Shown: piece by piece, positions 6,235 to 20,337 of the stretch | Layout of the letters: every line of letters starts with the position of its first letter | Position numbering within the stretch: position 1 is the stretch's first letter | Source: Octopus bimaculoides | Lineage: Eukaryota | Length of the DNA: 42,579 nucleotides | Direction: 5' to 3' | NCBI RefSeq assembly: GCF_001194135.2 | Contig: NC_068992.1 | Span: 24,739,689 to 24,782,267 of the forward strand | Program-made: the position numbers and the translations under genes | The notes under the pieces: model-generated | What the model was told of the DNA's origin: nothing | Databases searched by the model: none | What the model saw: only the letters and a program-made list of their open reading frames with translations

Positions 6235-6355
6235 TTTCGGGGTCGATAAATTAAGTACCAGTTACGCCCTGGGGTCGATCTAATAGACTTAATTCCTTTG
6301 TCTGTCCTTGTTTATCCCCTCTCTGTGTAGCCCCTTGTGGGCAATAAAGAAATAA
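6235..6355 (+). mobile_element. SINE family B body with alternative 3' tail (shared with element H)
   Basis: 6235-6289 matches the family B core ggggtcgataaattaagtaccagtt...ggggtcgatctaat. 6290-6355 matches the tails at 32371-32410, 34666-34725 and 40083-40128. The 5' part is lost in a gap. Confidence 0.75.
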
Positions 6356-6554
6356 GAAACGTTAGCACGTCGGGAAAAATGCTTAGCGGTATTTCGTCTG
6401 TCTTTATATTCTGAGTTCAAATTCCGCCGAAGTCGACTTTGTCTTTCATCCTCTCGGGGTCGATAAATTAAGTATCAGTTGCGTACTGGGGTCGATCTAA
6501 TCGACTAGCCCCTCTCCCAAAAGTTTCGGGTCTTGTGCCTAGAGTAGAAAAGAA
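6356..6554 (+). mobile_element. SINE family B (tRNA-derived), slightly 5' truncated
   Basis: Co-linear with 15703-15914; B box gagttcaaattcc; ends gcctagagtagaaaagaat. Confidence 0.9.
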
Positions 6555-6562
6555 TCGTTAGC

Positions 6563-6652
6563 AATAAGTACCAGTTACGTACTGAGGACGATGTAATCCA
6601 CTGGTCTCCTCCCACAAAATTTCAGGCCTTGTGCCTTTAGTAAAAAGGATAT
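6563..6652 (+). mobile_element. SINE family B 3' fragment
   Basis: taagtaccagttacgtactgagg...ggccttgtgcctttagtaaaaaggat matches the family B 3' half. Confidence 0.8.
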
Positions 6653-6856
6653 TATAGACTGATTTAATACAAACACAAACACAACATACAGATAAAGATT
6701 GTAAATCCCGCCTCTTTTAATCTATATATGTATGTTTGTGCATGTGTATATATAGAAATATAAGTACACACCTAATCGAGAGTATACCTTAAAAAAATAG
6801 ATATACTTATGTGTATATTTGCTTATGTGTATGTATTTATGTGTGTCTCAGATAAA

Positions 6857-7062
6857 CTGGCAGAAACGTGAGCATTCTGGACGAAATGCTTAGCGGTTTT
6901 TCGCCTGTCTTTACGTTTTGAGTTCAAATTCCGCCGAGGTCGACTTTGTCTATCATTCTTTAGGGGGTCGATAAATTAAGTACCAGTTGCGTACTGGGGT
7001 CAGTCTATTAGACTGACCCCTTCCCCCAAAATTTCGGGCCTTGTCTAGAGTAGAAAAGAATA
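6857..7062 (+). mobile_element. SINE family B
   Basis: ctggcagaaacgtgagc...gggccttgtctagagtagaaaagaat, co-linear with 15703-15914. Confidence 0.9.
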
Positions 7063-7198
7063 TCATTAGGAATTGTATGACAAAAAATTTTTTTTAATAC
7101 TTTGTGTATTGTAGAAATCGACCCAATTTATTGGAGATAAATTTTAACAACAAAAACGGACCCCTAAGGGTTATATTGACCCTGGTTAAGAACCACTG
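7061..7198. mobile_element. hAT-like MITE, 3' half
   Basis: Shares tatcattaggaa(t/c)tgtat and gacccc(t)taggg with 27474-27747. Ends in TIR ggttaagaaccactg followed by gtctagta, resembling the NTCTAGAN target preference known for Charlie-type hAT elements. Confidence 0.6.
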
Positions 7199-10383: not shown

Positions 10384-10409
10384 ACCTGTATTATGGCGCT
10401 AATCATTTT

Positions 10410-10642
10410 GATCGGAGTGCGAACGATTCTGCCAGCTCGCCACCTTATATGGGGGGGGGGGAACCAGTCGATTAGATCGACCCCCAGTACGCAACTGGTA
10501 CTTAATCTATCGATCCCCTGAAAGGATGAAAGGATAAAAGGATGAAAGTCGATCTCGGCGGAATTTGAAGTCAAGAGCGTAGCGACGGATGACATGCCGC
10601 TAAGCACTTTGCTTGGCGTGCTAACGATTCTGCCAGCTTGCT
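10410..10642 (-). mobile_element. SINE family B plus a second B head fragment
   Basis: 10448-10642 is reverse-complement family B. aacgattctgccagct occurs twice (~10423 and ~10623), marking two heads in tandem. Confidence 0.85.
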
Positions 10643-10656
10643 GACTTAAATAATAA

Positions 10657-18531: not shown

Positions 18532-19055
18532 TATTTTTGCTTAACTCCTTAAAAGAACAGGAGTTTATGATCGCCTTCATTAGCTTTACAGCCGTTTCGG
18601 CGTTGGGTGCATTTGCACTCAAAATTGAGTGTACGAATAACATCTTATAGCTTCGTCAGTGCCTTAACACACAACACAAACACACACACACACAAACACA
18701 CACACACATACATACATATCTACACACAAACACACACACACACACACACGTATATACNNNNNNNNNNNNNNNNNNNNNNNNNNNNNNNNNNNNNNNNNNN
18801 NNNNNNNNNNNNNNNNNNNNNNNNNNNNNNNNNNNNNNNNNNNNNNNTATATATATATACATATGCATTTATGTATGTATGTATATTTATATACATATAC
18901 ATACACACACATTTAAAAGAGATAATGTGAAGCATTATTGTATAGCCGTAGGCGACTTTAACTGTCTGTATTGCTGACTTTGAAAACGTGGCAGCTATTA
19001 ATACCTTATATAGTATTACACACGCAGAGACACACAAACACACGCGCACACACGC

Positions 19056-19086
<31 letters not shown>

Positions 19087-19410
19087 TACATATATACACA
19101 TACACGCACACATATATACACACAAACTATTAGACTAGATATGGAAGCATTATTTATAGCAAAATTCAAACGAAAATATTAAACACAGAAACAGAACACA
19201 CTTGTAACTAAATAAGTAAGTAATATAGAGTCGATTGTTAAAGAATTTTAACTCTGACGATGATGATTATATTATGTTTACATTATTTCTCTGAGCACTT
19301 GTTGCCTAAAACGAAACTCTCTGGATAACTTACCACGACCACGACTTTATGCAGAATATGTGACCGAGACGATATTAAATCGTTAAATTATAAAAGTAAG
19401 GGAAATATGA

Positions 19411-19818
19411 AGTATATTTGCCACTTAAATGCGGCTAACCCCTAAGGGTGAATGCTACTGTAGCTTGTAGCCCCAGGAGAACATCTCCTCCAGCTGGCTA
19501 TTGACACACTTTCTGTGCCTTGTCGGTATTTGAAAAGGGAGGTCATCCTCCCCATTGTCAATCTGACGTGATACGCACGGACCCGGGTTTCTGAGTATTT
19601 ACTCTTCGTCAGCGTACGACAATCACCGATCTTCGATGCGAAGGGGTCCCAATGCAAATACATATATCCTTTTTGCAGTTACGAAAATTCATTGATTTCA
19701 AAGAAGTGTAAACAAGCAATAATAAATCTCTGAACGAGGTATAAACAGTAGCAGCACGACAACGTGAAGTATATTTGCCACTTAAATGCGGCTAACCCCT
19801 AAGGGCGAATGCTACTGT
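19411..19818 (-). mobile_element. Element F: terminally redundant hammerhead-bearing retroelement (retrozyme-like)
   Basis: 19408-19463 and 19765-19820 are a 56-bp direct repeat with one mismatch, spaced 357 bp apart. agggaaatatga flanks both sides (19399-19410 and 19819-19830). Internal hammerhead at 19568-19626. Confidence 0.8.
19568..19626 (-). ncRNA. Type I hammerhead ribozyme
   Basis: Minus strand GTGAT TGT CGTACG CTGACGA A GAGT AAAT ACTC A GAAA C CCGG G TC CGTGCG T ATCAC. Core CUGACGA/GAAA, GUC cleavage triplet, stem I of 6 bp + 3x1 internal loop + 5 bp, stem II of 4 bp with AAAU loop, stem III of 2 bp with CCGG loop. The only flaw is an A.A opposition at the base of stem II. Predicted cut between 19580 and 19579. 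Confidence 0.85.
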
Positions 19819-19942
19819 AGGGAAATATGATGAAGCGAAAAGAAAATAAAACCCTTGAGAAATTAACTAAACTCGAACATTGATGTTCTTCCAGTAAAAC
19901 TACACATGCGCACAAGCACCCTTCCACCCACATGCGCACATG

Positions 19943-20054
19943 TATGTATGTATTATGTATGTATGTATGTATGTATGTATGTTTGTATGTGTGTATGCAT
20001 GTATGTATGTATGTATGTTTGTATGTGTGTATGTATGTATGTATGTATGTATGT
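19943..20054 (+). repeat. (GTAT)n microsatellite with internal higher-order duplication
   Basis: Read directly; the interruption gtttgtatgtgtgtatg occurs twice. Confidence 0.9.
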
Positions 20055-20337
20055 ACTCACGTTCCAGCAACCCGAACGGGTACAGCCTTCAATAAAACTG
20101 TCATAGATAGGTCTATACTGGATGAACATATTCTACTGTTGGAACAGCTGAACGCATATAAATGCTACATCGAGAGACATTAAGATATTTATGCACTAGA
20201 AACACGTGTCGGGACTGAAATCTAATCTGAATGTAATGTGAAGAATACTGTAACAAACAAGTTTTGAAAATGTATAAAGTCGGCATTCTGTTTCACGATG
20301 TCTTATATAATACATATGTGCGTACGTGCGTGCATAT

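What the first reader, a model, noticed from the sequence alone, without database searches (positions are those of the whole stretch)
19399..19830. Retrozyme-like element: 357-bp monomer plus ~55-bp terminal redundancy, TSD and a type I hammerhead
Seen: a ~410-bp insertion whose first and last ~56 bp are the same sequence (one mismatch, 357 bp apart), flanked by a 12-bp duplication agggaaatatga. The duplication overlaps the element ends by 2-3 nt of microhomology. The minus strand folds into a type I hammerhead with a GUC site. Known: non-autonomous hammerhead retroelements (non-LTR retrozymes) in metazoans such as mussel, coral and axolotl have monomers of a few hundred nt, make circular RNAs and are thought to use Penelope-like machinery. 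Inference: the insertion ends do not coincide with the cleavage site (19580), and the copy is about 1.15 monomers long. That fits reverse transcription that ran around a ~357-nt circular RNA past its start. This may be a cephalopod circRNA/retrozyme family; I cannot tell from here whether it is already catalogued.
Basis: partly seen in the sequence, partly recalled or inferred. Interest (0 to 1): 0.9.

Follow-up and report, generated by a model that had tools for sequence, protein, structure and literature searches.

The report
Hammerhead-bearing retrozyme-like repeat insertion
A roughly 410-bp non-coding insertion made of 1.15 copies of a 357-nt unit that carries a self-cleaving hammerhead ribozyme motif; it is one old copy of a very abundant repeat family of the already known 'retrozyme' kind, and I found no description of that kind for this animal group.

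Summary
A 56-nt direct repeat (1 mismatch, spacing 357) bounds a 413-bp element flanked by an exact 12-nt target-site duplication. The duplication overlaps the element ends by 3 and 2 nt. The minus strand carries the only hammerhead (HHR) motif in the window (0.025 expected by chance). Its architecture is that of the canonical metazoan type I HHR: helix I 6 bp, helix II 4 bp, and a 2-bp helix III within the palindrome ACCCGGGU. Alone, the HHR fold is unstable; two units together fold into a double hammerhead. The element belongs to a family with about 10^4 copies in at least four related species. It is transcribed, and it occurs in tandem and inverted arrangements. Across family members, N7 shows all four bases and no invariant core base varies. 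This matches metazoan non-LTR retrozymes, so it is a new member of a known kind. Not shown: self-cleavage, circular RNA, or a circular template. No RNA ends pile up at the cleavage site. A transcript of more than one unit comes from a genomic tandem array, not a circle. Rfam hammerhead models do not score the motif. This copy is old, shared by three species, and has one ribozyme, so it cannot release a unit itself.

The parts
19399..19410 (.). Left copy of the 12-nt target-site duplication AGGGAAATATGA; its last 3 nt (TGA) are also the first 3 nt of the element repeat
19819..19830 (.). Right copy of the 12-nt target-site duplication; its first 2 nt (AG) are also the last 2 nt of the element repeat
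19408..19820 (-). Whole inserted element, 1.15 units; the sense strand (the one with the ribozyme) is the minus strand
   Evidence: depth step from single copy to 10^3-10^5 at these borders
19408..19764 (-). One 357-nt unit (44% GC, no ORF with homologues)
19408..19463 (-). Terminal redundancy, copy 1 (56 nt)
19765..19820 (-). Terminal redundancy, copy 2 (56 nt; differs at 19806, C instead of the family's and copy 1's T)
19568..19626 (-). Type I hammerhead ribozyme motif, including the distal part of helix I
19606..19612 (-). Core box CUGACGA (C3-A9); N7 = 19608 shows all four bases in the family
19593..19604 (-). Helix II (4 bp, 19604-19601 / 19596-19593) with a 4-nt loop; the pair 19603/19594 is A-U here and G-C in 93-97% of the family
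19588..19591 (-). Core box GAAA (G12-A15.1)
19581..19588 (-). Helix III: palindrome ACCCGGGU (2 bp plus a tetraloop in one unit; an 8-bp intermolecular helix in a dimer)
19579..19580 (-). Predicted self-cleavage site: after C17 (19580), before 19579
   Evidence: no RNA ends seen here
19613..19618 (-). Helix I, 5' strand (CGUACG)
19574..19579 (-). Helix I, 3' strand (CGUGCG)
19408..19510 (-). Most conserved and most abundant block of the family, part 1 (the sense-strand 3'-terminal ~100 nt of this copy)
   Evidence: depth profiles
19710..19764 (-). Most conserved block, part 2 (contiguous with part 1 across the unit junction)
   Evidence: depth profiles; junction-spanning contigs

Best explanation
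This is one old, inert copy of a high-copy, non-autonomous retroelement family of the metazoan 'non-LTR retrozyme' type. The family unit is about 357 nt and non-coding. On its sense (minus) strand it carries a type I hammerhead with a very short, palindromic helix III, so the ribozyme should be active only when two units pair, as they can in a multimeric transcript. Proposed path, with each step marked as shown or inferred. (1) Tandem arrays of the unit are transcribed (shown: an RNA contig of more than 1.3 units). (2) Double hammerheads cut multimers into units, and a host ligase may circularise them (inferred from the published family; not shown here). (3) A reverse transcriptase supplied in trans, most likely from a Penelope-like element, starts on a nicked target. 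The + strand end ...AGGGAAATATGA-3' paired through TGA with ...UCA of the RNA, at a preferred site 172 nt downstream of the cleavage site (inferred from the 3-nt microhomology and from sibling copies ending at the same place). (4) It copied 1.15 units, so the template was longer than one unit: circular, multimeric, or reached by template jumping (the length is shown; the form of the template is not). (5) The cDNA end joined the other side of a 12-nt staggered break through a 2-nt AG microhomology, giving the 12-nt TSD (inferred from the anatomy). With a single ribozyme, this locus cannot release a unit-length RNA.
For: The anatomy (56-nt redundancy at spacing 357, 12-nt TSD, 3- and 2-nt microhomologies) comes. 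A single HHR descriptor hit was found in the window, against 0.025 expected. The architecture matches the published canonical metazoan type I HHR: helix I 6 bp, helix II 4 bp, helix III 1-2 bp with a palindromic loop, acting as a dimer (PMC4209133). The monomer HHR fold scores -0.1 to -2.2 kcal/mol against an MFE of -15.4 to -20.6, while the MFE of two units (-48.5) is the double hammerhead with an 8-bp intermolecular helix III. Family size: depth is 10^3-10^5 times the flanks in four species, with about 3-4.5x10^4 copies of the conserved block and about 0.5-1.6x10^3 copies of the HHR module at >=80% identity. Family variation at >=3% in two species: N7 shows all four bases, 10.1 varies, helix II has a compensatory A-U/G-C pair, the helix III change G>A keeps pairing (G.U), and none of the 12 invariant core bases varies (P=0.044). 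A divergent subfamily keeps a palindromic helix III (CUCGAG) and a perfect helix I. Tandem ('goes back ~350') and inverted joints appear in DNA contigs. An RNA contig covers more than 1.3 units, and transcripts are present in five RNA studies. No ORF has homologues, there is no tRNA-like head, and there is no poly(A) tail. Unit size and 44% GC fall within the published range (PMC7229834).
Against: Rfam hammerhead models give no hit even at E<=10 on an 86-nt segment. In this copy 10.1/11.1 is an A.A mismatch. RNA-seq depth is flat across the cleavage site, with no pile-up of molecule ends, so cleavage in vivo is not shown. The libraries look poly(A)-type and unstranded, and total expression is modest. 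The most abundant RNA contig over the HHR carries one compensatory and three disruptive changes, so it is a decayed copy. The exact HHR sequence of this copy exists in only about 1.5-3.6 copies, so its A-U pair could be two chance transitions. The structure z-score (-2.7) is the same on both strands. No PLE ORF lies in the window, and no link between the conserved block and a PLE could be tested. No empty site was found.
Confidence: 0.75

Rival explanations
1. Same element, but specifically copied from a covalently closed circular unit-length RNA. Reverse transcription went round the circle 1.15 times.
For: The copy is longer than one unit, and its ends do not coincide with the cleavage site. 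This is the published model for retrozymes (PMC7229834; PMC7761336). RNA reads are continuous across the cleavage site, as expected for re-ligated circles.
Against: Nothing distinguishes a circle from a multimer. The only over-unit RNA contig has two different sequences for the doubly covered stretch, so it comes from a genomic array. There are no cleavage-site ends. Tandem joints also exist in DNA. A dimer-dependent ribozyme predicts that uncleaved or partly cleaved multimers are plentiful.
Confidence: 0.35
2. A remnant of an autonomous Penelope-like element: an extremely 5'-truncated partial tandem consisting only of pLTR or 3'-UTR sequence, not a separate non-autonomous family.
For: PLE insertions form partial tandems (pLTRs), carry dimer-type HHRs, often have inverted truncated copies and a 30-40-bp tail at one end, and favour microsatellite-rich targets (PMC8557442; PMC4209133). 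The family shows inverted joints and two end clusters about 45 nt apart. Retrozymes are reported to derive from pLTRs.
Against: The sequence closes on itself with a 357-nt period in this copy and in DNA and RNA contigs (19820->19464-19472 joints; the 19527-19788 contig; the contig of more than 1.3 units), with no coding sequence in between. There is no RT or GIY-YIG ORF in the window. Helices I and II have canonical sizes, unlike the minimal PLE variants.
Confidence: 0.1
3. An ordinary SINE mobilised by a LINE (RTE, CR1 or similar), in which the hammerhead is a passenger or a decayed relic with no role in mobility.
For: If the host is an octopod, SINEs and LINEs dominate such genomes, and hundreds of SINE families are unclassified (PMC13282606, PMC8967140). 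The review itself says non-LTR retrozymes can be regarded as SINEs. There is a semi-fixed 3' end with a strongly conserved 3' block.
Against: There is no tRNA-, 5S- or 7SL-like head. There is no poly(A) or simple-repeat tail at the sense 3' end. The over-unit-length copy and the tandem and inverted arrangements are not typical of LINE-driven SINEs. The HHR core is invariant across subfamilies while N7 is free.
Confidence: 0.1
4. A DNA-level event: local duplication, or reinsertion of an extrachromosomal circle excised from a satellite array, with no RNA intermediate.
For: Tandem arrays exist, and both junctions have short microhomologies.
Against: The two repeat periods (357 and 420) exclude a single duplication. 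A clean 12-nt TSD fits a staggered endonuclease cut. Tens of thousands of dispersed copies with diverse AT-rich flanks point to transposition.
Confidence: 0.03

Closest known systems
Metazoan non-LTR retrozymes (Cervera & de la Pena 2020, PMC7229834: coral, mussel, axolotl)
   Same: Both have a non-coding unit of a few hundred nt (170-400; here 357), low GC (here 44%), a type I HHR, tandem occurrence, TSDs longer than 4 bp, thousands of copies, and transcription in many samples. The published mobilisation model, a primed circRNA giving cDNA longer than one unit, fits the 1.15-unit copy.
   Different: This locus is a dispersed 1.15-mer, not an array. Circular RNA and self-cleavage are not shown. 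Helix III is of the weak, dimer-dependent kind that the paper reports for amphibians, whereas most invertebrate retrozyme HHRs were reported to cleave efficiently as single motifs. I found no report for this host group.
Newt satellite 2 / axolotl retrozymes (~330-350 nt, dimer-acting HHR)
   Same: The unit length is nearly the same, and helix III is short with a palindromic loop. The computed double hammerhead is the stable form only for two units (the principle is from Forster et al. 1988, as cited in PMC4209133).
   Different: The host is unrelated, and no sequence similarity was tested. The amphibian elements have been shown experimentally to give linear and circular RNAs.
Minimal hammerheads in the pLTRs of Penelope-like elements (PMC4209133; PMC8557442)
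   Same: Both have a dimer-type helix III. Both show partial-tandem insertion architecture, inverted copies, a possible tail at one end, and an AT-rich, microsatellite-rich context.
   Different: There is no RT/GIY-YIG ORF and the period is 357 nt. Helix I (6 bp plus extension) and helix II (4 bp) have canonical sizes, not the long helix II and short helix I of the minimal variants.
Schistosome Sm-alpha SINE-like repeats with active hammerheads (Ferbeyre et al. 1998, cited in PMC4209133)
   Same: Both are high-copy, short, non-coding dispersed or tandem retroelements of an invertebrate that carry a type I HHR.
   Different: Sm-alpha has a tRNA-like SINE head (from my own knowledge). No such head was found here.
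Plant LTR retrozymes (PMC4918200)
   Same: Both are non-autonomous retroelements with HHRs, thought to move through circular RNA.
   Different: Plant elements have type III HHRs inside ~350-bp LTRs, a PBS and PPT, 4-bp TSDs and high GC. None of these features applies here.

Membership tests
Metazoan non-LTR retrozyme | Contains a type I hammerhead with the conserved core (CUGANGA ... GAAA ... UH) and three helices, helix I open | tested here: met
   The descriptor scan gave one hit in the window, against 0.025 expected. The pairs were verified. The core is invariant and N7 free across the family.
Metazoan non-LTR retrozyme | Non-coding unit of ~170-400 nt with low GC (<45-50%) | tested here: met
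   The unit is 357 nt with 44% GC. The longest ORF is 73 aa and has no homologue.
Metazoan non-LTR retrozyme | Occurs as head-to-tail tandem repeats (dimers to multimers) in the genome | tested here: inconclusive
   This locus is only 1.15 units. For the family, DNA contigs show 'goes back ~350' joints, and an RNA contig of more than 1.3 units has non-identical units. Short-read contigs cannot give array sizes, and no long reads were available.
Metazoan non-LTR retrozyme | No LTRs, PBS or PPT; TSDs, when present, longer than 4 bp | tested here: met
   The TSD is 12 nt. The 56-nt redundancy is part of the unit, not an LTR. There is no tRNA-related sequence.
Metazoan non-LTR retrozyme | Expressed as unit-length linear and circular RNAs | tested here: inconclusive
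   Family transcripts were found in five RNA studies. There were no ends at the cleavage site, and circularity cannot be read from these libraries.
Metazoan non-LTR retrozyme | The ribozyme self-cleaves (alone or as a dimer) | not testable with these tools
   Only thermodynamic support is available: the dimer MFE is the double hammerhead.
Metazoan non-LTR retrozyme | Coexists with autonomous Penelope-like elements in the same genome | not testable with these tools
The literature reports active PLEs in octopus genomes, but the host identity is unverified.
Rfam hammerhead families (Hammerhead_1 RF00163 and clan) | Scores at or above the curated gathering threshold of the covariance model | tested here: not met
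   There was no hammerhead hit at gathering score, nor at E<=10 on 601 nt or 86 nt.
Canonical metazoan type I HHR (as defined in PMC4209133) | Helix I ~6 bp, helix II ~4 bp, helix III 1-2 bp capped by a small palindromic loop | tested here: met
   Helix I is 6 bp (plus 5 distal), helix II is 4 bp, and helix III is 2 bp within the palindrome ACCCGGGU. The definition was read.
Canonical metazoan type I HHR (as defined in PMC4209133) | Conserved loop 1 / loop 2 tertiary contacts | not tested
   I had no reference alignment of loop motifs to compare with.
Autonomous Penelope-like element | ORF with a telomerase-like RT and a GIY-YIG endonuclease between pLTRs | tested here: not met
   There is no such ORF in or near the element. 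The window has no long non-repetitive ORF.
tRNA/5S/7SL-derived SINE | Pol III head related to a small RNA, and a LINE-type 3' tail | tested here: not met
   ARAGORN found nothing. Rfam gave no tRNA, 5S or 7SL hit at E<=10. The sense 3' end ...AAAUAUACUUCA has no A-rich or simple-repeat tail.

The most novel reading that the evidence does not exclude
The family, with its ~160-nt hyper-conserved 3' block present in tens of thousands of copies, is a major and so far unrecognised component of the 'unclassified SINE' expansion of this clade. That would mean a large share of that expansion was driven by Penelope-type machinery acting on hammerhead-processed (possibly circular) RNAs. It would also mean reverse transcription starts at a defined internal site 172 nt downstream of the cleavage site, which would be a first concrete priming signal for animal retrozymes. 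The 2020 review says no conserved motif pointing to the partner element had been found in their repeats.
Probability: 0.15. Interest if true: 0.65.

Novelty: new member of a known kind. Interest (0 to 1): 0.4.

Why it matters
If confirmed, it adds another animal lineage to the hosts of hammerhead retrozymes, with a family of about 10^4 copies. It also shows that standard Rfam-based annotation misses such ribozymes, since no model scored this one. The single clean 1.15-unit insertion, with its TSD and microhomologies at both junctions, is a useful molecular fossil of the integration step. It shows that the template was longer than a unit and that priming did not occur at the ribozyme-generated end. 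The strongly conserved 3' block and the clustered 3' ends give a concrete handle for identifying the partner reverse transcriptase. This particular locus has no evident function.

Tried and rejected
- Rfam at gathering and at E<=10 on 601 nt and 86 nt gave no hammerhead hit.
- Unconstrained folding of the segment gave an MFE that is a competing fold pairing CUGACG with CGUCAG, z = -0.29.
- A search for further copies in the window found none.
- Collection scans with a 22-nt conserved-block pattern gave two chance 22-28-nt hits in metagenomes and none in the GTDB genomes or viral contigs.
- Using the spurious 73-aa ORF over the HHR as a handle to fetch other copies found no homologue.
- No long-read runs are listed.
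- The empty-site search in more distant species failed: species D also has the insertion, species F lacks the whole family, and the short right flank is barely assembled anywhere.
- No RNA ends were seen at the cleavage site.
- The covariation argument from RNA variants had to be weakened, because the linked variants of the best-covered RNA contig include three disruptive changes.
- I first read 'loose ends before 19408' as family termini. Their consensus turned out to be homologous to 19735-19764, so these are internal continuity, not ends. Only the high-stringency rows with long unique flanks were used for end positions.
- A local tandem duplication was rejected because the repeat and the TSD have different periods.

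Full report
**Observation.** A 56-nt direct repeat lies at 19408-19463 and 19765-19820 (55/56 identical, spacing 357). An exact 12-nt AGGGAAATATGA lies at 19399-19410 and 19819-19830. The last three bases of the left 12-mer (TGA) are also the first three of the repeat. The first two bases of the right 12-mer (AG) are also the last two of the repeat. The inserted DNA is therefore 408-413 bp, or 1.14-1.16 units of 357 nt. The repeat (period 357) and the flanking duplication (period 420) have different periods, so one local tandem duplication cannot explain both. Public DNA contigs of four runs give single-copy depth (5-25) on the left flank. Depth steps up to 10^3-10^5 at about 19406 and returns to background at about 19815-19820. 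The insertion borders are thus the borders of a high-copy repeat. The element occurs once in the window.

**The ribozyme.** On the minus strand I read these parts:
- helix I: CGUACG (19618-19613) with CGUGCG (19579-19574), extended after a small internal loop by GUGAU/AUCAC;
- CUGACGA (19612-19606);
- helix II: 4 bp with a 4-nt loop (19604-19593);
- GAAA (19591-19588);
- helix III: A-CCCGGG-U (19588-19581);
- GUC, with C17 at 19580.

A descriptor of the RNAmotif type finds exactly this one motif on both strands of the 42.6-kb window. Shuffled windows give 0.025 hits. The architecture is what Cervera and de la Pena (PMC4209133) describe for canonical metazoan type I hammerheads: helix I 6 bp, helix II 4 bp, and helix III 1-2 bp capped by a small palindromic loop, active as a dimer.

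The energetics agree. As a single unit the hammerhead conformer is worth only -0.1 kcal/mol in this copy and -2.2 in the family-consensus helix II version. A competing fold reaches -15.4 and -20.6. The minimum-energy structure of two units together (-48.5 kcal/mol, against 2 x -20.6) is the double hammerhead, with an 8-bp intermolecular helix III.

There are three points against. No Rfam hammerhead model scores the motif, even at E<=10 on an 86-nt segment. The unconstrained fold of the segment is not a hammerhead. Positions 10.1/11.1 are an A.A mismatch in this copy.

**The family.** Summed contig depth relative to the flanks suggests about 3-4.5 x 10^4 copies of the best-conserved block (19710-19764 joined to 19408-19510) in coded species A and B, and about 10^4 in species C and D. 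For the hammerhead module at >=80% identity, the estimate is about 0.5-1.6 x 10^3 copies. These are rough figures from assembler word depths. A further species (F) has no trace of the family. The orthologous left flank in species B (16 differences in 340 nt) and species D (18 in 298 nt) runs into the element. The insertion therefore predates about 5-6% sequence divergence. One difference between the two 56-nt copies is compatible with that age. This copy differs from the majority consensus at about 27 of 357 positions.

**Constraint on the ribozyme.** At a 3% threshold, in DNA of two species, the variable sites between 19574 and 19618 are 19585, 19586, 19594, 19598, 19601, 19603, 19604, 19605 and 19608. 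Their positions in the motif are as follows.
- Position 19608 is N7, the one core position that is free in hammerheads. It shows all four bases.
- Positions 19594 and 19603 are partners in helix II. They are A-U here and G-C in 93-97% of the family.
- The change 19586 G>A keeps pairing in the palindrome, as G.U.
- None of the 12 invariant core bases varies (hypergeometric P = 0.044).
- A divergent expressed subfamily has helix III CUCGAG, again a palindrome, and a perfect helix I CGUACG.

This evidence is suggestive, not strong. The best-covered RNA contig over the ribozyme carries one compensatory and three disruptive linked changes, so it is a decayed copy. The exact ribozyme sequence of this locus exists in only about 1.5-3.6 copies.

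**Arrangement and ends of other copies.** DNA contigs show 'goes back ~350' joints, meaning more than one unit head to tail. They also show many 'opposite strand' joints, meaning inverted copies. Assembly artefacts cannot be excluded. At 97% identity, contigs with long unique flanks place the left ends (the sense-strand 3' ends) of sibling copies in two clusters. One is at about 19404-19416, including its equivalent 19761-19763. The other is at 19714-19722, often next to (TA)n or AT-rich DNA. This copy's 3' end (19408-19411) belongs to the first cluster. The 3' end is therefore semi-fixed, not freely permuted, and it lies 172 nt downstream of the cleavage site. Partial tandems, inverted truncated copies, an extra 30-40-bp tail at one end and a bias to microsatellites are the published hallmarks of Penelope-like element insertions (PMC8557442).

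**RNA.** Family transcripts are present in raw reads of three 2026 runs and in contigs of four older RNA studies. Mate orientation is balanced, so the strand cannot be assigned. Depth is flat across 19580|19579, and no pile-up of molecule ends occurs there (about 80 reads per run). Cleavage in vivo is therefore not shown; uncleaved and re-ligated RNA are both compatible. A 605-nt RNA contig covers 19415-19820 and runs on into 19472-19531. The doubly covered stretch has different sequences in the two passes. That contig is a transcript of a genomic tandem array, not an assembly of a circle. Junction-spanning contigs identical to this copy only show that the 19764/19408 junction is internal sequence in sibling copies.

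**What it is.** The element has none of the features of the alternatives:
- no ORF with homologues;
- no tRNA-like head;
- no poly(A) or simple-repeat tail;
- no retroelement ORF nearby in a gappy, microsatellite-rich scaffold.

The unit has 44% GC and folds somewhat better than shuffles on both strands (z about -2.7). Size, GC, ribozyme type, tandem occurrence, long TSD, copy number and expression all match metazoan non-LTR retrozymes (PMC7229834; PMC7761336). A 2026 preprint argues that these derive from Penelope-like pLTRs. My evidence requires a template longer than one unit and priming away from the ribozyme-made end. It does not tell a circle from a multimer or from template jumping.

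**Most likely mechanism.** The + strand is the first cDNA strand. The nicked target end ...AGGGAAATATGA-3' paired by TGA with ...UCA of the RNA. Synthesis ran 1.15 units. The cDNA end ...GTAG joined the other side of a 12-nt staggered break through AG. Because this locus has a single ribozyme, it cannot itself release a unit.

**Novelty.** I found no paper describing hammerhead retroelements in cephalopods. The only related item is a count of 235 Rfam Hammerhead_1 hits in the giant squid genome paper. Two detailed octopus repeat studies do not mention ribozymes. The tools code organism names, so I could not verify the host. Retrozymes are already known from a mollusc and many other phyla, so this is a new member of a known kind. 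Dfam/Repbase could not be consulted.

Noticed in passing
window 6237-7073: A cluster of copies of another repeat family. A 53-nt block occurs at 6237, 6454, 6550 and 6962. A 105-nt block occurs at 6355-6459 and 6862-6966 (83% identical, spacing 507). There is a 96-nt period x1.9 at 6469-6647. It contains a tRNA B-box-like GAGTTCAAATTCCGCC near 6413-6428, so these are probably tRNA-derived SINE copies in partial tandem.
   Followed up: no
window 10393-10450 and 10594-10651: A 58-nt direct repeat, 79% identical, spacing 201. Its nature is unknown.
   Followed up: no
window 19563-19612: In the unconstrained fold, the core box CUGACG (19612-19607) pairs with CGUCAG (19568-19563). This alternative conformer would keep a single unit, or a circle, from cleaving itself.
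   Followed up: partly
window 19527-19788 (RNA contigs of runs X25 and X31): One family copy with a decayed hammerhead (19575T, 19576A, 19584T, 19595A, 19602G) is the best-covered RNA contig in two independent studies (depth 118 and 76). It is probably a single copy embedded in a well-expressed transcript. A second abundant RNA species diverges from this copy at 19615.
   Followed up: no
window 19408-19510 with 19710-19764: This ~160-nt block is 10-50 times more abundant than the rest of the unit at the same identity cut-off. Either it is under much stronger constraint, for example as an RT recognition module, or it is shared with other families.
   Followed up: partly
whole window: The window is a draft scaffold with 18 N-runs (5,992 N) and very dense microsatellites. 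The element sits between (AC)n at 19018-19124 and (ATGT)n at 19940-20055.
   Followed up: no
window 19140-19440 in other species' runs: The insertion is shared by coded species A, B and D (flanks 94-95% identical), and the whole family is absent from species F. The family is therefore restricted to one clade and the copy is old.
   Followed up: partly
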